The notes beneath the pieces were generated by a model. That model did not search any database. It worked only from the letters and a program-made list of their open reading frames with translations, and had not been told where the DNA came from. DNA of 64,000 bases, from IMG/VR virus record IMGVR_UViG_3300042515_001753, positions 62,001 through 126,000 of that record. One strand, written 5' to 3'. The translations under genes were made by a program, and so were the position numbers. Shown here piece after piece: positions 1-36,339 of the stretch; the stretch's first letter is position 1; each line of letters begins with the position of its first letter.

Positions 1-1454
1 TCAAGTTCTTTTGATTTTTTCTTCTCATACTGTTTTTTTGCCTCAATCATCTTCTCCTTATATACAACACGATCATTATACATTTTCTCCATTAGTTCTG
101 GAAGAAAACCACGAATGTCCTTACGGTACATAGCACCATTAGGGCAAACTGCATAATCCTTATACATATCAAAAGTAAGTTCCTGATTGAGAATTTTATC
201 CACGGTTACACTAGGATGCCTTTCTTCAACAAGTGTTTCGGGACTTACATTAAATTGCATAATCAAATGTGGATAAAGACTGTTTAAGTCAAAATTAACC
301 ACCCAATCATACTTTCCAGGAATTGGTTCTTTTACATAAGCTCCAGCATACTTGGAATCTTTATCAGTTTTTTCTTTCGGAGGAATTACAATATTCCTCT
401 GCTTAAGATAATTATAGATAATCGTATCCCACATTCTTACCTGAGAAAACACATCCTCATAGTTTACCTTACCATCATATGCCATAGTCAAGGCAAGTTC
501 AATCAGTTTCATCTTGTCTTCCAAACGGTCAACAAGTTCTACGTCAACGATGTTGTATTCTACAAACTTCTGCCAACCTTTAGTATAGAAGTCCTTAAAA
601 GTATCAAACTCAGAGTGATCCAGTTTTTTCTGATTGAGTTCTACGCTGGCAATATGATCTAGACGATAAGATTCCTGCGCTTTATAAGTGAATTTCTTAT
701 AAAGTTTAATGTAATCTAATTGACTAATACCACCAATATCATAGGAAATGTGCTTTCTTCCAGATATGTAAACTTCATCCTCAGTCACAAGACCCCAGGG
801 TGACATACGCTTCATCAATTTCTCACCCAAAACTCTATCCAGGCGACGAACGAGATAGGGAATATCATAAAGTTCACTGTTCCAACCAGTAATAACCTCT
901 GGAGTATTATCCTCAATCATCCACCAGTGAATAAAATCATTTAATAGACTATACTCATCAGAGAATCCTCGGTAAGAAACATTTGATTGATTATTATCAA
1001 ACTTACCCAATCCCCAAGTACGAATTTGTTTCGTATTATAGTCTTGAAGTGTAATGAGTAGTACTTCTTCTGCCGCATTTTCCACATCAGGAAATCCATT
1101 TTCGGATGCAACCTCAATGTCAATTGTGGTAAGTTTAATTTTACTAATATCAAACTTAATTTCATTTTCCGGATATTTGTCCGAAATATATTGATAGATG
1201 TACTTGTCGTTTCCGTAAATTTTAAAGTTTTGTACATCAGTATACTTCTTAATAAACTCTCTACAATCCCTTACAGAACCAGGTTGAATAGGTTCTACAT
1301 ATTCTCCCTGAAGTGTCGTATATTTGGTTGTTTTTTTAGACGGAACAAAAAGAGTAGGAGAGAACTTCTCACGGGTCATAAAATGTCTACCATTTTCATA
1401 ACCACGAACCAAGAAGTGGTCCCCAACCATTTGCACGTTTGTATAAAAATTCAT
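1..1454 (-). CDS. gp43: DNA polymerase, family B (T4 gp43-like); 5' part only, runs off the window
   Basis: Manual translation from ATG at 1454 (MNFYTNVQMVGDHFLVRGYENG...) is open to base 1. It contains ExoI TIDIEV, ExoII ITGWN...YDIPY and polymerase motif A FDLNSLYPHLI. Absent from the ORF track because it is truncated. Confidence 0.97.
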   Translation of the reverse strand, partial: MNFYTNVQMVGDHFLVRGYENGRHFMTREKFSPTLFVPSKKTTKYTTLQGEYVEPIQPGSVRDCREFIKKYTDVQNFKIYGNDKYIYQYISDKYPENEIKFDISKIKLTTIDIEVASENGFPDVENAAEEVLLITLQDYNTKQIRTWGLGKFDNNQSNVSYRGFSDEYSLLNDFIHWWMIEDNTPEVITGWNSELYDIPYLVRRLDRVLGEKLMKRMSPWGLVTEDEVYISGRKHISYDIGGISQLDYIKLYKKFTYKAQESYRLDHIASVELNQKKLDHSEFDTFKDFYTKGWQKFVEYNIVDVELVDRLEDKMKLIELALTMAYDGKVNYEDVFSQVRMWDTIIYNYLKQRNIVIPPKEKTDKDSKYAGAYVKEPIPGKYDWVVNFDLNSLYPHLIMQFNVSPETLVEERHPSVTVDKILNQELTFDMYKDYAVCPNGAMYRKDIRGFLPELMEKMYNDRVVYKEKMIEAKKQYEKKKSKEL

Positions 1455-1708
1455 CAGGCAGTTAATTCAAGATACTTGTTAACGATTTCGGGAGTTGGTT
1501 CTGCGATTGTGAGAATACTATCAGAATGAATCATTAATTCGGTCTGATTAGTAACCTCGGGCCAGGGTTTCATATCATCCACACTAAAAAATTCATATGG
1601 ATTAATTAACTTACAATCAGGTTCACCAAGTTCGGATCCAATCTCAACAATTTCGGTAATTAAGATAGTATCAACCTTCAAGAGAAGACACTTCACATTC
1701 CTTTCCAT
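1454..1708 (-). CDS. conserved cyanophage hypothetical protein (possible Sm-like fold)
   Basis: 84 aa ORF; its stop overlaps the gp43 ATG (ATGA); usual position between hsp20 and gp43. Confidence 0.75.
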   Translation of the reverse strand: MERNVKCLLLKVDTILITEIVEIGSELGEPDCKLINPYEFFSVDDMKPWPEVTNQTELMIHSDSILTIAEPTPEIVNKYLELTA

Positions 1709-2006
1709 TTACTTTTTCCTCATACATTTGTTTGATAGCCTCTACTGGTTCAACAATTGTCACAACCCAATCTAGACGAACTGGAATCTCATTATCACTT
1801 GTAAAGAGAATCCAGGAAGAAAATGTTACACTAACTGTACCATCTTCTGGTTCTATTGGTTCTTCTGTTAAGAAGATTGAATTGCTGATCTTCATTTTAT
1901 GCGGATTCGTGAACAAATATCCACATACTTTATCTTCAGAAATCAACTCCTTAATATCGGCAATTACTGATTCTCCAGATTTTAATAGAGCAATTTTTAC
2001 AGACAT
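1671..2006 (-). CDS. conserved cyanophage hypothetical protein (possible Sm-like fold)
   Basis: Likely start MSVKIALLKSGE at 2006, after a GAGG SD and downstream of the 2028-2055 promoter; resembles the adjacent ORF. Confidence 0.75.
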   Translation of the reverse strand: MSVKIALLKSGESVIADIKELISEDKVCGYLFTNPHKMKISNSIFLTEEPIEPEDGTVSVTFSSWILFTSDNEIPVRLDWVVTIVEPVEAIKQMYEEKVNGKECEVSSLEG

Positions 2007-2027
2007 TTTTAGTTTTCCTCTCAATTC

Positions 2028-2055
2028 ATTATAGCATAAAAAAGGGAGGTGTCAA
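2028..2055 (-). promoter_or_regulatory. sigma70-type promoter TTGACA-N16-TATAAT with extended -10 (TGn)
   Basis: Minus strand reads TTGACA CCTCCCTTTTTTATGC TATAAT. Confidence 0.8.
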
Positions 2056-2078
2056 CTGGTTTTTGCCAGTTACCTCCC
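2038..2078 (-). terminator. intrinsic terminator after hsp20
   Basis: GGGAGGT-AACTGG-CAAAAA-CCAGTT-GAC-ACCTCCC followed by T6. Confidence 0.75.
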
Positions 2079-2102
2079 TGCGGCAACGATATTCAATTAT
2101 AT

Positions 2103-2537
2103 TTATAGGTACTCTTTTCTGCTATGGTGTTCTGGAATAATCTTTCCTAGTCGAATGACAAGTAGTCCGTCTTCAAAGGTGACTTCTCGGACTTCGGTAT
2201 CGTCGGATAGTGTCCATGCTCTCTTGAAACTTCGTTGAGCCAGACCCTTGTGGACAAACGTCCTATCCGATTCTGTATCTGATTTTTGCCCCTCGACAAA
2301 AAGTTTTCCATACTCTGTGAAGACATTTACTTCCTCCTTTTTAAATCCTGCAAGTGCGATCTCTAAATGAGACTCTACATTATTTACCTGAATTAGATTG
2401 TAAGGTGGATAATTATTTGTAGTTTCGTGAAGATTAAATAGACGATCAAAATATTCGTCCATTCCAATACTATTGCGTGTAATCCTGTCCATCAAGGCAG
2501 GAAGATCCGCAGATGTGTATCTAGAAAGATTAGTCAT
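2103..2537 (-). CDS. hsp20: small heat shock protein (Hsp20/IbpA family)
   Basis: NYPPYNLIQ, EIALAGF, HKGLAQRSFKRAWTL and A/TFEDGLLVI alpha-crystallin motifs. Confidence 0.96.
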   Translation of the reverse strand: MTNLSRYTSADLPALMDRITRNSIGMDEYFDRLFNLHETTNNYPPYNLIQVNNVESHLEIALAGFKKEEVNVFTEYGKLFVEGQKSDTESDRTFVHKGLAQRSFKRAWTLSDDTEVREVTFEDGLLVIRLGKIIPEHHSRKEYL

Positions 2538-2590
2538 TATAGTATCTCCTTATAAAGCGAGGTTTGATTGTGTGGACCCCGAAGGCGTCC
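2538..2590 (-). promoter_or_regulatory. structured hsp20 5' UTR, ROSE-like RNA thermometer candidate
   Basis: GGAC[G]CC-UUCG-GGGUCC hairpin, then CUC[G]CUU-UAU-AAGGAG with a bulged G opposite the SD; -10 TATAAT at 2596-2601. Confidence 0.65.
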
Positions 2591-2615
2591 TTACTATTAT
2601 ATATCAGTTCATAAT

Positions 2616-2638
2616 AAAAAAGGGAGTGTTGAACTCCC
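2616..2638 (-). terminator. intrinsic terminator after regA
   Basis: GGGAGT-TCAAC-ACTCCC followed by T6. Confidence 0.8.
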
Positions 2639-2645
2639 TACTGTA

Positions 2646-3086
2646 TTATTCGGTTTCTTCAACCTTTTTCCTTTTAGATCCAATATTATACTTGGTTTCC
2701 AGAATCCAATCTGCCTTTTCTTTATGAGGAAGAACTTTGATTTGATTTAATGGAGCAATATCCTGAACCTTACTCACATCAACTACTTCAACCAATCCCC
2801 AATCAGCAATTAACTGAACGATACGATTACGACGCTGAATATCATTTACAGTTAAGTTTGCGTGTTTGCCATCCAGAGCAAAAAGTTCCTTAAAGTGTGT
2901 AATAAAGTAACGACCTTGCTTATGAAGAATGTGACAACTCTGATAAAGTTTCTTCTCTTTTCTTGAGGCAACTCCAATACGAGTCAAAGTTTCACGAACT
3001 TTTAAGAAATCATCTGGTTCATTCAGAATGACTTCTATCATCATATCAGGCGACCATTGTATAATCGGTTCTTGAACGACACTCAT
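2646..3086 (-). CDS. regA: translational repressor RegA
   Basis: DDFLKVRETLTRIGVASRKEKKLYQSCHILHKQGRYFITHFKELFALDG. Confidence 0.97.
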   Translation of the reverse strand: MSVVQEPIIQWSPDMMIEVILNEPDDFLKVRETLTRIGVASRKEKKLYQSCHILHKQGRYFITHFKELFALDGKHANLTVNDIQRRNRIVQLIADWGLVEVVDVSKVQDIAPLNQIKVLPHKEKADWILETKYNIGSKRKKVEETE

Positions 3087-3469
3087 TTTGTTCCTCCAGT
3101 TTCAAATTTCGATTTAATAAATGTTAGTTGTTCTTTTGTTAGAATCCTCAAAGCCTGCTGTGCCTTTTCATTACTATAACCATAATAACGTTTGACAATA
3201 TCAAGATCTTTGATTGTATCTTTACGAAGCCAAGGAGAATATCTCCTCTTAACTCTCAGAATATTTATAAGAAAGTCATATTGCATTTTTTTAGGAAGAA
3301 AATGATACTGATTCAATTCATTCACAAACATAATACAATCAATTTCTCCGGAAAGACACCGATTGATAATATATGGCGCATACCCCTTCTCAGTTGAAGG
3401 GTCTTCATCAATCAGGTTCTTCTTTGTTTGATTGATCGAGTTCAACCAGTCCTTTAGTTCAGGCATCAA
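3083..3469 (-). CDS. gp62: clamp loader small subunit
   Basis: LKDWLNSIN...YAPYIINRCLS...QYDFLIN..VKRYYGYSNEKAQQAL; synteny with regA. Confidence 0.92.
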   Translation of the reverse strand: MMPELKDWLNSINQTKKNLIDEDPSTEKGYAPYIINRCLSGEIDCIMFVNELNQYHFLPKKMQYDFLINILRVKRRYSPWLRKDTIKDLDIVKRYYGYSNEKAQQALRILTKEQLTFIKSKFETGGTK

Positions 3470-4361
3470 CCAATCCCTCCTTCTTCAATCTATCATAATT
3501 ATAACACCCATCAAAACTAAATTGTATCTTAGGACCTTTAGTATAATTGAACAACAAAAGTTCCTTTCGTTGTTTTTGGTCTCTCATATACTCACCAACC
3601 GAACGCATAGTATAAGTTAAATCAAACTCTGTGGCATTCCAGTTCTTGAATCTATCCTTTATAAGTTGGTCTGAATTATAACTCACCAATTGGTCCATAT
3701 CATTAGCATCGCAATCAGCAGCAAACTTATCGTGATCAAATCCTTTGTGCATTGATCCTTTGCGCCCATAGAGATTATCCTTAATATCATAAGGAGGGTC
3801 AAGATACATAAACGCACCTTTGTTTCCATCCATCAAATAATCATATGAATAATTAGTTATACGCCATTTCTCAATCAGTTTACAGTATTCTGGCAGTTTT
3901 TCAATTCCACGAAGACTGAAGTTGGCATTGGATGCTTGAGGAGAGAAAGAAGAACTTTCTGTGAGACCACTGAAAGAACACTTATTAATAATATAAAAAT
4001 CAACCGCACGATCAAGATTTGAACGTCCTTCTTCGTGTAATTTATCCTTACAATAAAGAAATAGATCCCTTGCTAATTCTGGGTTATTGTTTGCTAATTT
4101 TATTCCTTTAAGATTATCTTTCAGATCTGTTCCAAACATCTGAAGTTGCTGCCAGAAGTTTACCAGAGGTTCATAAAGGTCATTCACCCAAATATCCAAG
4201 AGTGGATACTTCTTTGTGATGTGAATTGCAACACTCCCACCGCCAATAAATGGTTCCCGAAACTCATCATAATTTCGTAGGTCTGGAAAGAAAGGGTCCA
4301 TCTTGACACAAGCACGGGACTTGCCGCCAGGGTATCTTAAAGGGGTCTTAAGAGACTTCAT
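3459..4361 (-). CDS. dam: DNA adenine methyltransferase (D12/Dam class)
   Basis: Likely start MKSLKTPLRYPGGKS; EPFIGGGSV (SAM binding) and YLDPPY (catalytic motif IV). Confidence 0.92.
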   Translation of the reverse strand: MKSLKTPLRYPGGKSRACVKMDPFFPDLRNYDEFREPFIGGGSVAIHITKKYPLLDIWVNDLYEPLVNFWQQLQMFGTDLKDNLKGIKLANNNPELARDLFLYCKDKLHEEGRSNLDRAVDFYIINKCSFSGLTESSSFSPQASNANFSLRGIEKLPEYCKLIEKWRITNYSYDYLMDGNKGAFMYLDPPYDIKDNLYGRKGSMHKGFDHDKFAADCDANDMDQLVSYNSDQLIKDRFKNWNATEFDLTYTMRSVGEYMRDQKQRKELLLFNYTKGPKIQFSFDGCYNYDRLKKEGLVDA

Positions 4362-34932: not shown

Positions 34933-36339
34933 TCAATAAGAACCAAATGGATTAGATTCAGAAAAATCTAAAATAGATTCTGCTTCGGTTTGAATCTGCA
35001 AATTATCTCCGTAATTATCATAAGGATTCCAATTGCTATAAGTATTTACCGAATATTGAGCATTAGAAATTGATCCTGTAATTGTTTCACCAGGGAAAAA
35101 TCCATTAGGAGTTACATTATTAACAAAAGAAACTTTAAGAGTTTTTGTATCAAAATCCCAAGATTTAACTCTTGCTGTTGTACCAGAGTTAGATCCTGTT
35201 ACAATTTCGTTAAAGATATAGGTTCCAATTCCACTTAAAATTGGTGGTGCATCAATAACAACTTGAGGGGCAATAGTGTATCCTACTCCAGGATTTGTAA
35301 TACTTATAGAAGATACAGACTGAGCAGTTCCAACCACTGATGATATTGCAGTTGCAGTTACTCCAGAACCAACATTTCCTACAATACTTACATAAGGTGC
35401 CGTTGAATATCCAACTCCACCAGTCCATTGCAGATCTTGGTAGAGATCTATGGAAATAACACCAAACTGTGAGGTTTCAATTCCGCAGGTGGCAGCAGCA
35501 CCGACACCATTTCCAATAATTGAGATATTTGGAGCAACAGTATAACCAGTACCAGCATTAGTCAATACTATCTGTTTTATAGCGTAAAATCCAGATTTCA
35601 ATTCTGCAATTGCTTCTGCCGCCGCATTTGTTCCTCCCAAAGGTGCAGAAGATATGCCGATAGTTGGAGGAGAGGTATAACCATATCCATCATTATTCAA
35701 GGTTATTTCTCTAATATAACCAGTTCCAATGGTTGCTAATGCTGTTGCAGGTATTCCAAGTCCAATTAAATTCAACGTTGTTATATATCCTTCATCTTGA
35801 ATTTGAGTATCAATTTCATCAATAGAAGTGTCAATAACTTCATCCTCATACTCAAACAATTCACATCTTAACTCATAAACATATAATTTACCCAACTGAT
35901 AAAATGGTTGTTCGTGCTCTACAAATTTAACCTCAAATAATCTTTGTCCTAGGGGAAAATATACTAAATCTCCTTCTCTAGGTCTGGATGATAAAACAAT
36001 TTCTTCATCACTTTCTGTCTCTAAAAAAGGAGAAATAAAATCCTCAAACCTTTCTTTGGAAATAATTAAACTTAAATCATCCTTTAAACTCATTCCAAAT
36101 TTAGTAAGAATATCTCCTTGCCCACTATATCCCTCATAATTATTCACATATGCTTCTAGTGCAAAATTATCATCAAACTTAGATGATGAAATTTCTCTTA
36201 AAATGGTTTCTCTTCTTACAAATTTTCTAGGGATATAAATTACTTCTACCCCATAAATCCTCAACTGTTCGTTGATTAACTCTTGGACAAGTCTTTGTTC
36301 ATTTGGTGAACCTTGAAGAAAGAAAGGATTTAGTGCCAT
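34933..36339 (-). CDS. gp14: neck protein with inserted repeat modules
   Basis: EQRLVQELINEQLRIYG, RPREGDLVYFP, FYQLGKLYVYELRCELFEY; C-terminal DFSESNPFG; TATAAATA at 34922-34929 serves gp15. Confidence 0.92.
   Translation of the reverse strand: MALNPFFLQGSPNEQRLVQELINEQLRIYGVEVIYIPRKFVRRETILREISSSKFDDNFALEAYVNNYEGYSGQGDILTKFGMSLKDDLSLIISKERFEDFISPFLETESDEEIVLSSRPREGDLVYFPLGQRLFEVKFVEHEQPFYQLGKLYVYELRCELFEYEDEVIDTSIDEIDTQIQDEGYITTLNLIGLGIPATALATIGTGYIREITLNNDGYGYTSPPTIGISSAPLGGTNAAAEAIAELKSGFYAIKQIVLTNAGTGYTVAPNISIIGNGVGAAATCGIETSQFGVISIDLYQDLQWTGGVGYSTAPYVSIVGNVGSGVTATAISSVVGTAQSVSSISITNPGVGYTIAPQVVIDAPPILSGIGTYIFNEIVTGSNSGTTARVKSWDFDTKTLKVSFVNNVTPNGFFPGETITGSISNAQYSVNTYSNWNPYDNYGDNLQIQTEAESILDFSESNPFGSY

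What the first reader, a model, noticed from the sequence alone, without database searches (positions are those of the whole stretch)
2538..2601. ROSE-like RNA thermometer on the phage hsp20 leader
Seen: downstream of a TATAAT, the leader folds into a c(UUCG)g hairpin followed by CUC[G]CUU-UAU-AAGGAG. Six base pairs occlude the Shine-Dalgarno, with an unpaired G in a UCGCU motif. Established: U(U/C)GCU paired to AGGA with a bulged G is the hallmark of ROSE thermometers, which control small heat shock genes in proteobacteria. Inference: the phage senses host temperature or stress post-transcriptionally to gate sHSP translation. I do not know of a characterised phage ROSE element.
Basis: partly seen in the sequence, partly recalled or inferred. 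Interest (0 to 1): 0.75.

Follow-up and report, generated by a model that had tools for sequence, protein, structure and literature searches.

The report
Phage hsp20 leader: short ROSE-like thermometer
The messenger RNA leader of this lake cyanophage's small heat-shock gene carries a conserved two-hairpin element that hides the ribosome-binding site in the same way as the bacterial "ROSE" RNA thermometers; I found no earlier report of one in a virus, and its response to temperature is still untested.

Summary
A TATAAT (2601-2596) is followed by hairpin I (2590-2574: c(UUCG)g loop, bulged G2586). Hairpin II (2561-2546) is CUC[G]CUU-UAU-AAGGAG, 8 nt before the hsp20 AUG (2537).

In this sequence alone the signal is no better than chance: hairpin II is -2.6 kcal/mol (z -0.75), and Rfam gives no hit.

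The comparative evidence is strong:
- 235 of 236 distinct hsp20 leaders from cyanomyoviruses, down to about 40% protein identity, keep both hairpins.
- Both bulged G's are invariant, the stems show compensatory changes, and 92-95% of pair cells are paired (0/500 shuffles reach this).
- The anti-SD arm has zero diversity, against 0.34 at third codon positions.
- A covariance model hits each phage genome strongly once, always at hsp20.

Hairpin I has the architecture of hairpin I in canonical ROSE (RF00435). Hairpin II is nearly the same as the SD hairpin of the validated E. coli ibpA thermometer. The nearest cellular Hsp20 homologues are alphaproteobacterial sHSPs whose leaders carry the same motif.

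Verdict: a phage-borne, reduced two-hairpin ROSE-like element, apparently unreported. Temperature sensing is inferred, not shown. Autoregulation by Hsp20, as in IbpA, is a live additional possibility.

The parts
2615..2639 (-). Intrinsic terminator after regA: stem AGGGAGU / ACUCCCU at 2639-2621, then a T-run. It separates regA from the hsp20 transcription unit.
   Evidence: Terminator scan; sequence. regA is PF01818, 7e-42.
2596..2601 (-). TATAAT -10-like hexamer, 5 nt upstream of hairpin I. This is the inferred promoter; the transcription start is inferred at about 2591-2589.
   Evidence: Sequence. In relatives a TATAAT, or a late-type (N)TAAATA, sits about 3-8 nt upstream of hairpin I. The late-promoter consensus NATAAATA is from PMC2984593. 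No transcription-start data were obtained.
2574..2590 (-). Hairpin I: GGAC[G]CC-UUCG-GGGUCC, six pairs with G2586 bulged, probably at the extreme 5' end of the mRNA. It has the architecture of ROSE hairpin I. Its inferred role is as a heat-stable folding or stabilising module.
   Evidence: In the minimum-energy structure. Four of six pairs show compensatory changes and the bulged G is invariant in 95 diverse leaders. Same bulged G + CC + 4-nt loop + GG layout as the Rfam ROSE consensus and the Sinorhizobium ROSE.
2562..2573 (-). A/C-rich single-stranded linker (ACACAAUCAAAC) between the two hairpins.
   Evidence: Unpaired in the minimum-energy structure. Diversity 0.12 among 80 close relatives, against 0.34 at third codon positions.
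2546..2561 (-). Hairpin II, the proposed sensor: anti-SD CUC[G]CUU (2561-2555, G2558 bulged), loop UAU (2554-2552), SD AAGGAG (2551-2546).
   Evidence: The core Y[G]CU / AGG is present in 235 of 236 unique leaders. The G, C and U after the bulge are invariant. Diversity is 0 for both arms and 0.24 for the loop. Compensatory variants are listed. Near-identical to the E. coli ibpA ROSE_2 SD hairpin.
2535..2545 (-). 8-nt spacer AUACUAUA and the AUG start codon (2537-2535). The AUG is left unpaired.
   Evidence: An unpaired AUG is also reported for the Pseudomonas short ROSE-like elements (PMC3669281).
2103..2537 (-). hsp20 coding sequence (144 aa), a class-A / IbpA-like small heat-shock protein and the regulated gene.
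   Evidence: PF00011, 5e-13. Aligns with E. coli IbpA and keeps the equivalents of Y34, R93 and R97 (Y43, R102, R106). RNA-library contigs cover the CDS at about 10-100 times the depth of its neighbours (weak evidence).
2038..2079 (-). Strong terminator hairpin plus T-run downstream of hsp20. With the upstream terminator it makes hsp20 monocistronic.
   Evidence: -20.9 kcal/mol, z -4.05; sequence. It overlaps a perfect TTGACA-16-TATAAT promoter for the next gene.

Best explanation
The hsp20 mRNA of this freshwater T4-like cyanophage starts with a reduced, two-hairpin ROSE-type leader.

Hairpin I sits at the 5' end. It is G+C-rich, has a tetraloop and a bulged G, and is a stable structural module. 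Hairpin II pairs the anti-SD CUC[G]CUU with the Shine-Dalgarno AAGGAG: six weak pairs, one bulged G opposite the GG. This keeps the 30S subunit off the ribosome-binding site at low temperature.

When temperature rises, the marginally stable hairpin II opens and Hsp20 is translated. Accumulating unfolded protein might also trigger opening; see rival 1.

Shown here:
- the structure exists as a conserved, covarying RNA element;
- it is specific to hsp20;
- it matches validated ROSE-type elements in sequence and architecture.

Inferred:
- the transcript 5' end;
- that SD occlusion limits translation in the cyanobacterial host;
- that the opening is driven by temperature.

The element most likely arrived together with a class-A (IbpA/HspA-type) proteobacterial sHSP gene.
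For: Anatomy at the stated coordinates.

Conservation:
- Both hairpins are present in 235 of 236 distinct hsp20 leaders from five cyanomyovirus clades, 40-98% Hsp20 identity.
- The two bulged G's and the C and U that follow the second are invariant in 95 diverse leaders.

Covariation:
- 91.7% of pair cells are paired against 81.8% in shuffles (0/500); slid registers give 35-61%.
- After covariance-model realignment, 94.7% against 83.7% (0/500).
- RNAalifold recovers both stems de novo.
- Hairpin II variants with compensatory changes: CUC[G]CUU/AAGGAG; GUC[G]CUU/AAGGAC (51 leaders); CUC[G]CUA/UAGGAG; AGAC[G]CUU/GAGGUCU; AGAU[G]CUU/GAGGUCU; AGAU[G]CUU/GAGAUCU; and UUGCU forms.

Selection: diversity is 0 in the anti-SD and SD arms, 0.24 in the loop, 0.34 at third codon positions and 0.41 in the promoter spacer.

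Specificity: model R1 gives one strong hit per genome, always the hsp20 leader, in the window, in its own 146-kb record and in five complete phage genomes. S-CAM8 keeps the leader although a different gene lies upstream.

Kinship with validated thermometers:
- The E. coli ibpA ROSE_2 SD hairpin is CUC[G]CUG-AUUU-CAGGAG plus 9 nt to the AUG, against CUC[G]CUU-UAU-AAGGAG plus 8 nt in the phage.
- The ROSE consensus hairpin I has the same bulged G + CC + tetraloop + GG.
- Caulobacterales sHSP leaders carry CUCGCUU-loop-AAGGAG.
- ROSE_3 gives its only candidate in S-SRM01 at the hsp20 leader (19.2 bits, below the cut-off).

Protein kinship: the nearest cellular homologues are alphaproteobacterial sHSPs, and published trees place cyanophage sHSPs nearer to bacterial class A than to cyanobacterial sHSPs (PMC3827213).

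Against: - There are no experimental data on temperature response for any phage copy.
- Rfam ROSE, ROSE_2 and ROSE_3 do not reach threshold, and give no hit at all in the window.
- Hairpin II alone is not distinguishable from shuffled sequence.
- Predicted SD accessibility of the window leader is nearly flat (0.17-0.34) from 5 to 55 C. The same model also fails for the validated E. coli element, so this counts for little.
- In the S-RSM4 clade, and in a subclade retrieved with the S-CAM8 Hsp20, the AUG follows the SD by only 0-2 nt. That is too close for a canonical SD.
- One natural variant (L166) has lost the anti-SD arm.
- The transcript 5' end is inferred only from the position of -10-like hexamers; the metatranscriptome contigs gave no transcript start.
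- Picocyanobacteria depend less on SD pairing than enterobacteria (my own knowledge, not tested here).
Confidence: 0.7

Rival explanations
1. Autoregulation by the protein, alone or on top of thermosensing. Hsp20 would bind its own structured leader and repress translation, as E. coli IbpA does. Unfolded or aggregating clients would titrate Hsp20 away and release translation. The leader would then sense proteotoxic load rather than, or as well as, temperature.
For: - IbpA binds the ibpA 5'UTR, which is a ROSE-type thermometer, and represses its own translation. R93 is irreplaceable, R97/K98 need positive charge, and Y34 is aromatic. R93 is common in alpha- and gamma-proteobacterial IbpAs (PMC10474464).
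- All six aligned phage Hsp20s have Arg at the R93 and R97 columns and Tyr at Y34 (window R102, R106, Y43). E. coli IbpB, which does not self-regulate, has Gln and Leu at the R93 and R97 columns and Phe at the Y34 column.
- Both hairpins show the same invariant bulged-G motif, Y[G]C / GG, which would suit recognition by a dimer.
Against: - No binding data exist.
- The complex prediction was not run by the tool and gives no evidence.
- The K98 equivalent is not conserved.
- These Arg residues lie in the conserved alpha-crystallin core and may be kept for chaperone structure.
- The bulged G in hairpin I is also present in cellular ROSE elements and needs no phage-specific explanation.
Confidence: 0.3
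2. A constitutive leader with no sensing role. Hairpin I would protect the 5' end against RNase E/J-type decay, and hairpin II would merely set a fixed, moderate translation rate.
For: - Hairpin I begins within a few nucleotides of the inferred start.
- Predicted accessibility changes little with temperature.
- hsp20 RNA is abundant relative to its neighbours in lake metatranscriptome contigs.
Against: - A simple rate-setting hairpin would not need an invariant bulged G and the exact ROSE core across about 40-98% protein identity and into pelagiphages and a Pseudomonas jumbo phage.
- In the validated relatives the same hairpin is the thermosensor (PMC3669281).
Confidence: 0.15
3. A DNA-level regulatory site. 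The conserved string would be a Pho box bound by PhoB, as proposed for S-PM2d hsp20, or another transcription-factor site.
For: PMC10976474 lists ATTCAAACTCGCTTAAATA at -31 of S-PM2d hsp20 as a putative Pho box and reports hsp20 as differentially expressed under phosphate limitation.
Against: - That string is the linker, the anti-SD arm and the loop of hairpin II.
- Its second half-site falls in the loop, which varies freely among relatives (diversity 0.24; UU to AAAAAA).
- The conserved positions covary with the SD arm as base pairs, which a protein-binding DNA site would not require.
- It lies downstream of the -10 element, inside the transcribed leader.
- The first ROSE element was likewise first mistaken for a transcription-factor site (PMC4166951).
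Confidence: 0.04
4. An operator for the translational repressor RegA, whose gene lies immediately upstream.
For: regA-hsp20 adjacency is widespread in cyanomyoviruses. RegA proteins repress early mRNAs at their initiation regions (established knowledge for T4).
Against: - The SD-to-AUG spacer, where a T4-type RegA site would lie, is the least conserved part between clades and is absent in some.
- The leader is kept in S-CAM8, where regA is not the upstream neighbour.
- The same element occurs on cellular sHSP genes that have no RegA.
Confidence: 0.04

Closest known systems
Short two-hairpin ROSE-like RNA thermometers of Pseudomonas ibpA (Krajewski et al. 2013, PMC3669281). Rfam ROSE_3 (RF02523) may be the matching model; I did not check which sequences it was built from.
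   Same: - 5'UTR of about 55-60 nt on a class-A sHSP gene.
- A G+C-rich hairpin I; in Pseudomonas it is heat-stable.
- A short hairpin II in which U(U/C)GCU pairs imperfectly with the SD.
- The AUG is left unpaired.
- ROSE_3 gives its only candidate in phage S-SRM01 at the hsp20 leader.
   Different: - Found in viruses, not in a cellular genome.
- Promoters are sigma-70-like or T4 late-type rather than sigma-32.
- The core is not flanked on both sides by G-C pairs as in Pseudomonas: the upper pairs here are U-A, U-A, with a 3-nt loop.
- The score is far below the Rfam cut-off (19 against 43 bits in S-SRM01; nothing in the window).
E. coli ibpA thermometer (Rfam ROSE_2, RF01832)
   Same: The SD hairpin is almost the same sequence and shape: CUC[G]CUG-AUUU-CAGGAG plus 9 nt to the AUG, against CUC[G]CUU-UAU-AAGGAG plus 8 nt. 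The protein is homologous (33% identity) and keeps Y34, R93 and R97.
   Different: The upstream hairpin differs in sequence. ROSE_2 gives no relevant hit on the phage genomes.
Canonical rhizobial ROSE (Rfam RF00435; B. japonicum hspA type)
   Same: Hairpin I has the same design: stem, bulged G, CC, 4-nt loop, GG. The last hairpin has the same register, UU[G]CUC / GAGGA (Sinorhizobium americanum, 85.5 bits). It also sits on the nearest cellular homologues of the phage protein.
   Different: Canonical ROSE is about 94 nt. It has a middle hairpin and a long lower stem that also pairs the AUG region. The phage lacks both, and RF00435 finds nothing in the phage genomes.
Anabaena variabilis 'avalong' ROSE-like thermosensor (Cimdins et al. 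2014, PMC4152365)
   Same: Two hairpins, the second short, with the SD paired to a ROSE-like anti-SD. This shows that ROSE-type control occurs on a cyanobacterial sHSP gene (it was assayed with reporters in E. coli and by in-vitro probing).
   Different: avalong has a bulged U instead of G, and a long hairpin I with a possible second anti-SD in its loop.
Phage lambda cIII thermometer
   Same: The only phage RNA thermometer named in the review consulted (PMC4166951).
   Different: An unrelated structure: two alternative conformations, with translation ON at low temperature and reduced at 45 C. It is not associated with a heat-shock gene.

Membership tests
ROSE / ROSE-like RNA thermometers | Located in the 5'UTR of a small heat-shock (class A, IbpA/HspA-type) gene | tested here: met
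   The downstream ORF is PF00011. It aligns with E. coli IbpA, and its nearest cellular homologues are alphaproteobacterial sHSPs. Review: ROSE is always associated with sHSP genes (PMC4166951).
ROSE / ROSE-like RNA thermometers | Two to four hairpins, with the 3'-proximal one holding the SD | tested here: met
   Two hairpins in the minimum-energy structure. They are recovered by RNAalifold and supported by covariation. The range of two to four stem-loops is stated in PMC4166951.
ROSE / ROSE-like RNA thermometers | U(U/C)GCU anti-SD paired imperfectly with AGGA of the SD, with a bulged G opposite GG | tested here: met
   The window has U2560 C2559 [G2558] C2557 U2556 against A2550 G2549 G2548 A2547. 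Y[G]CU/AGG is present in 235 of 236 unique leaders. One clade replaces the first U-A pair by A-U. Definition: PMC3669281 and PMC4152365.
ROSE / ROSE-like RNA thermometers | Scores above the gathering threshold of an Rfam ROSE model (RF00435, RF01832, RF02523) | tested here: not met
   No hit at E<=10 on the 86-nt leader or the 1.2-kb region. ROSE_3 finds nothing in the window's own genome. ROSE_3 scores 19.2 bits, against a cut-off of 43, at the S-SRM01 leader. ROSE_2 and ROSE give no relevant hit on relatives' genomes; they were not run on the window's own whole genome. Positive controls passed: E. coli ibpA at 100 bits and Sinorhizobium at 85.5 bits.
ROSE / ROSE-like RNA thermometers | Heat-induced melting of the SD hairpin and temperature-dependent translation | not testable with these tools
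   Nearest-neighbour partition functions gave shallow or flat curves. They also failed to open the validated E. coli element, so they are uninformative. Reporter assays, probing and toeprinting are needed.
ROSE / ROSE-like RNA thermometers | Non-canonical heat-labile pairs around the bulged G (NMR-defined G-G pair and triple) | not testable with these tools
   Only the sequence prerequisites are seen: a bulged G facing GG. The review statement on heat-labile non-canonical pairs is in PMC4166951.
Cyanobacterial hsp17-type thermometer (Synechocystis) | [quoted passage not shown] | tested here: not met
   The phage leader has two hairpins and a ROSE-type bulged-G anti-SD. hsp17 is described as a class of its own in PMC4152365.
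Pho box (PhoB-binding DNA site) | Conserved tandem 8-bp half-sites at a promoter-proximal position | tested here: not met
   The proposed second half-site lies in the variable loop. The conserved bases covary as RNA pairs, and the site lies downstream of the -10 element.

The most novel reading that the evidence does not exclude
ROSE-type thermometers are not confined to cellular genomes. They would be a standard part of virus-encoded small heat-shock genes. The same two-hairpin leader precedes hsp20, a core gene of cyanomyoviruses (all 16 genomes compared in PMC3037559). It also appears in T4-like phages of SAR11 and OM43, and in a Pseudomonas jumbo phage.

On this reading, some of the most abundant viruses in oceans and lakes read temperature directly through their own mRNA, or read proteotoxic stress through IbpA-like binding of Hsp20 to the leader. 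They would then tune chaperone supply during infection. Gene and sensor would have been captured together from a proteobacterial class-A sHSP locus and kept under strong selection in hosts that use other thermometer types.
Probability: 0.5. Interest if true: 0.75.

Novelty: new member of a known kind. Interest (0 to 1): 0.62.

Why it matters
- hsp20 is one of the 25 cyanophage core genes (PMC3037559) and its role in infection is unknown. A conserved, strongly selected translational sensor on its mRNA says that the amount of Hsp20 must be matched to conditions. It also gives a direct experimental handle: leader mutants and temperature shifts.
- It would extend the ROSE class from alpha- and gamma-proteobacterial chromosomes to viruses. 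Apart from lambda cIII, which works the other way round, it would be the only phage RNA thermometer I know of.
- It links viral gene expression to water temperature, which matters for models of phage-host dynamics in warming lakes and oceans.

Practical consequences:
- It corrects hsp20 start codons annotated inside hairpin I in at least two GenBank genomes.
- It re-reads a published 'Pho box' as an RNA stem.
- It shows that the Rfam ROSE models miss this whole branch, so a new seed alignment (A2/A5, model R1) is warranted.

Tried and rejected
- Rfam cmscan at E<=10, on 1.2 kb and then on the 86-nt leader alone: nothing in the leader.
- ROSE, ROSE_2 and ROSE_3 on whole phage genomes: only one sub-threshold ROSE_3 hit, at the S-SRM01 leader.
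- Single-sequence statistics (shuffle z-scores, motif count, SD-occlusion rank): not significant, so they are not used as support.
- Temperature-dependent partition functions (5-55 C) for the window, three marine phages, E. coli ibpA and Sinorhizobium ROSE: the validated E. coli control does not 'open' in silico, so these are rejected as a test.
- Metatranscriptome contigs laid on 1400-3500 to find the transcript 5' end: no ends reported, only higher depth over the hsp20 CDS.
- Hsp20 dimer plus leader RNA complex prediction: the tool did not fold it, so there is no evidence either way.
- Doron et al. 2016 (Syn9 transcriptome, possible transcription-start data) is not held in the library.
- RegA operator and Pho box readings: considered and judged unlikely (see rivals).
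- The + strand ORFs across the leader (2473-2727 and 2568-2750) were not tested. I treat them as spurious because the conserved features read as a minus-strand RNA.
- The covariance-model realignment did not put the AGA/UCU clade in structural register, so its compensatory pairs are documented by the anchor-based script and not by the pair-count tool.
Full report
**1. What is there**

The finding lies on the minus strand. Reading 5' to 3' on that strand:
- regA (3086-2646; PF01818, 7e-42) ends with TAA at 2648-2646.
- A terminator-like hairpin follows at 2639-2621, with a T-run.
- TATAAT: 2601-2596.
- Hairpin I: GGAC[G]CC-UUCG-GGGUCC, 2590-2574, with G2586 bulged.
- An A/C-rich linker: 2573-2562.
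- Hairpin II: CUC[G]CUU-UAU-AAGGAG, 2561-2546, with G2558 bulged.
- An 8-nt spacer, then the AUG at 2537.
- A 144-aa Hsp20 (PF00011, 5e-13).

Downstream of the stop codon (2105-2103) is a strong terminator hairpin at 2079-2043 (-20.9 kcal/mol, z -4.05). hsp20 is therefore its own monocistronic unit.

**2. Is it more than chance?**

In this one sequence, no.
- Hairpin II alone is -2.6 kcal/mol, z -0.75.
- The whole leader has z -1.5.
- The motif TCGCT-N(1-12)-AGGAG is found once against 0.33 expected.
- Among 19 SD-bearing genes in the window that I could score, hsp20 is only the 4th most sequestered.

The case therefore rests on comparison with relatives.

**3. Comparative evidence**

The window is a lake-water T4-like cyanophage. 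Its genome record is a 146-kb fragment, about 68% complete. The nearest named phage is Synechococcus phage S-SRM01, at about 80% nucleotide identity.

I fetched 371 hsp20 loci from IMG/VR and GenBank, using five Hsp20 queries that are 43-61% identical to the window protein.

*Conservation.*
- Of 236 distinct leaders, 235 have hairpin II with the core Y[G]C opposite GG. Most have 6 pairs and loops of 3-6 nt.
- One variant (L166) keeps hairpin I but has lost the anti-SD arm.
- In an alignment of 95 diverse leaders the only invariant columns are the bulged G of each hairpin, one G of the GG in hairpin I, and the C and U after the second bulge.

*Pairing and covariation.*
- 91.7% of pair cells form standard pairs, against 81.8 +/- 0.7% after shuffling partners (0/500). 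Slid registers give 35-61%.
- After realignment to a covariance model: 94.7% against 83.7% (0/500). That alignment is fitted to the structure.
- Hairpin I has compensatory changes at 4 of 6 pairs. Examples are GGAC/GUCC, GGAU/AUCC, GAUC/GAUC and GAAC/GUUC arms, with UUCG, GAAA, GUAA and UAAC loops.
- Hairpin II is constrained by the SD but still shows double changes. The outer C-G becomes G-C in the S-RSM4 clade (51 unique leaders). The inner U-A becomes A-U in a Prochlorococcus-phage group.
- One freshwater clade reads AGAC[G]CUU/GAGGUCU, AGAU[G]CUU/GAGGUCU or AGAU[G]CUU/GAGAUCU. There U-A has become A-U, C-G has become G-C, and one pair runs C-G, U.G, U-A.
- RNAalifold predicts the outer stems of both hairpins without being given a structure.

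*Selection.* Among 80 close relatives (84-98% protein identity), nucleotide diversity is as follows:

| Region | Diversity |
|---|---|
| anti-SD arm | 0 |
| SD | 0 |
| hairpin II loop | 0.24 |
| linker | 0.12 |
| hairpin I | 0.18 |
| third codon positions | 0.34 |
| terminator-promoter spacer | 0.41 |

*Specificity.* Covariance model R1 (59 positions, 12 pairs) gives one strong hit per genome, always the hsp20 leader.
- Window: 63.8 bits, E 2e-15; the next hit is 16.5 bits.
- The same holds in the window's own 146-kb record.
- In five complete phage genomes the hits run from 30 to 73 bits.
- S-CAM8 keeps the leader although a different gene lies upstream. The element therefore belongs to hsp20, not to regA.

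**4. What it is**

The literature defines ROSE-like thermometers by three features:
- a position in the 5'UTR of small heat-shock genes;
- two to four hairpins;

Sources: PMC3669281, PMC4152365, PMC4166951. The window has U-C-[G]-C-U against A-G-G-A in exactly that register.

Three direct comparisons made here go beyond the motif.

(a) The E. coli ibpA leader matches Rfam ROSE_2 at 100 bits. Its SD hairpin is CUC[G]CUG-AUUU-CAGGAG with 9 nt to the AUG. The phage has CUC[G]CUU-UAU-AAGGAG with 8 nt. The objection that the phage hairpin is 'too weak' therefore applies equally to a validated thermometer.

(b) A search of 185,579 species genomes with the phage Hsp20 profile returned mainly alphaproteobacterial sHSPs at 34-44% identity: Caulobacterales, Sphingomonas, Sinorhizobium and Brevundimonas. 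No cyanobacterial sHSP appeared among the best 80. The two closest hits (a 74% 'Actinomycetota MAG' contig and a 63% Prochlorococcus single-cell contig) carry the phage-type leader and are probably phage DNA. [quoted passage not shown]

(c) Those cellular genes carry ROSE elements.
- Sinorhizobium americanum matches RF00435 at 85.5 bits. Its hairpin I, GCCGAC[G]CC-loop-GGGGUCGGC, has the architecture of phage hairpin I. So does the Rfam consensus: stem, bulged G, CC, 4-nt loop, GG.
- Caulobacteraceae and Asticcacaulis leaders read CUCGCUU-loop-AAGGAG, letter for letter the phage hairpin II arms.

The phage element is thus a ROSE element reduced to its first hairpin and the top of its last. The architecture is that of the short two-hairpin ROSE-like thermometers of Pseudomonas ibpA: a 61-62-nt UTR, a heat-stable G+C-rich hairpin I, a short sensing hairpin II, and an unpaired AUG (PMC3669281).

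Formal Rfam membership fails.
- There is no hit at E<=10 in the window.
- The only near miss is ROSE_3 at 19.2 bits (cut-off 43), on the S-SRM01 hsp20 leader, which is its sole candidate in that 241-kb genome.

I read this as a gap in the Rfam seeds rather than evidence of a different kind. It is still recorded as a failed test.

**5. Reach beyond cyanophages**

With filters off, R1 also finds the two-hairpin leader in front of hsp20 in other phages:
- Pelagibacter phage Mosig: 22.7 bits.
- Pseudomonas jumbo phage Deifobo: 21.3 bits.
- Methylophilales phage Melnitz: 20.4 bits.
- Pelagiphage HTVC115P: 10.6 bits, weak.

It also finds it in several marine proteobacterial MAG or single-cell contigs that may themselves be phage DNA.

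**6. How it most likely works**

*Shown:* a conserved, covarying, hsp20-specific RNA structure that sequesters the SD and matches validated thermometers.

*Inferred:*
- Transcription starts at the base of hairpin I. A TATAAT, or a T4 late-type (N)TAAATA, sits about 3-8 nt upstream in all clades (late-promoter consensus from PMC2984593).
- Hairpin I acts as a stable 5' module.
- Hairpin II opens as temperature rises and lets the 30S subunit bind.

I could not test melting. Nearest-neighbour partition functions give a nearly flat SD accessibility for the window leader (0.17-0.34 from 5 to 55 C) and modest rises for P-HM1, S-CAM8 and S-RSM4. They keep the validated E. coli ibpA SD closed at all temperatures, so the method does not discriminate.

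Metatranscriptome contigs show the hsp20 CDS at about 10-100 times the depth of its neighbours, but give no transcript ends.

**7. Rivals**

The most serious rival is IbpA-type autoregulation, which could coexist with thermosensing.
- E. coli IbpA binds its own ROSE-type 5'UTR and represses translation. This needs R93, positive charge at R97/K98, and an aromatic Y34 (PMC10474464).
- All six aligned phage Hsp20s keep Arg at the R93 and R97 columns and Tyr at Y34. IbpB, which does not self-regulate, lacks all three.
- No binding evidence could be obtained.

Other rivals:
- A published reading of the S-PM2d sequence ATTCAAACTCGCTTAAATA as a Pho box (PMC10976474) is unlikely. The string is the anti-SD arm plus the loop, the loop half varies freely, the conserved bases covary as RNA pairs, and it lies inside the transcribed leader.
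- A RegA operator is unlikely, because the SD-to-AUG spacer is the least conserved part and the element occurs without regA.
- A purely constitutive stability and rate-setting leader cannot be excluded. It would not explain the invariant bulged G.

**8. Unexplained**

- In the S-RSM4 clade the AUG follows AAGGAC by 0-1 nt. In a subclade retrieved with the S-CAM8 Hsp20, AAGGAGCU is followed directly by the AUG. Both spacings are too short for canonical SD use. There the hairpin may act by occluding the start region as a whole, or initiation may work differently.
- Why hairpin I keeps the same Y[G]C/GG motif as hairpin II is not known, in ROSE generally.

**9. Novelty and verdict**

Searches of the held literature found no report of a ROSE-like or other RNA thermometer on a phage sHSP gene. 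A 2024 review still treats temperature-responsive viral RNA structures as speculation (PMC10884466). Lambda cIII is the known phage thermometer and works in the opposite sense (PMC4166951).

I classify the element as a new member of a known kind: phage-borne, and missed by Rfam. The temperature response remains to be shown.

Noticed in passing
L081 (S-SRM01, MW015081) and L083 (P-HM1, NC_015280), hsp20 start: The deposited hsp20 start codons lie 17 codons too far upstream, inside hairpin I of the leader (ATG in GGATGCC; GTG in GTGTCGCC). The conserved start is the ATG after the SD.
   Followed up: partly
S-PM2d hsp20 upstream region (PMC10976474, Table of Pho boxes): The published putative Pho box ATTCAAACTCGCTTAAATA at -31 coincides with the anti-SD arm and loop of hairpin II.
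   Followed up: yes
window 2028-2079 (-): The strong hsp20 terminator hairpin (z -4) overlaps a perfect sigma-70 consensus promoter (TTGACA 2055-2050, 16 nt, TATAAT 2033-2028, preceded by TG) for the next gene. The -35 hexamer lies inside the 3' arm of the terminator.
   Followed up: partly
window 1454-2024 (-): Two adjacent DUF6561 (PF20198) paralogues lie just downstream of hsp20 (117 aa and 84 aa). Their reading frames overlap by about 38 nt.
   Followed up: no
L167-L246 (S-RSM4 clade); L127, L132, L135, L139 (retrieved with the S-CAM8 Hsp20): The start codon follows the SD-like AAGGAC or AAGGAGCU by only 0-2 nt, although the hairpin is kept. This is unexplained for a canonical SD mechanism.
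   Followed up: partly
L166:335-406: A natural variant keeps hairpin I and the SD but has lost the anti-SD arm. It could serve as a natural 'derepressed' control.
   Followed up: no
L463 (Pelagibacter phage Mosig), L462 (Methylophilales phage Melnitz), L464 (Pseudomonas phage Deifobo), L461 (HTVC115P): The same two-hairpin ROSE-like leader precedes hsp20 in phages of SAR11, OM43 and Pseudomonas (R1 scores 22.7, 20.4, 21.3 and 10.6 bits).
   Followed up: partly
L380 (Actinomycetota MAG contig PBPX01000015), L381 (Prochlorococcus SAG), L394/L395 (Gammaproteobacteria / Rhodobacteraceae bins): These 'bacterial' contigs carry phage-type hsp20 with the phage-type leader. L394 and L395 also have a TATAAATA late-promoter-like box. 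They are probably phage DNA binned into cellular genomes.
   Followed up: no
L460:2907-2925 (-), E. coli ibpA-ibpB spacer: The ibpB leader contains ACUCGCUU-cUUAg-AAGGAG, the same arms as the phage hairpin II.
   Followed up: no
window 2103-2537 against 2538-3100 in runs X18, X21, X23: Lake and marine metatranscriptome contigs cover hsp20-like sequence at roughly 10-100 times the depth of regA and the leader (contig word depth; relatives are included).
   Followed up: partly
window 35938-36042 (+): Second-best R1 hit (16.5 bits, E 0.02): a hairpin-I-like stem and CUC-CUU...AAGGAG separated by a 51-nt insertion. It lacks the bulged G and is probably chance.
   Followed up: no
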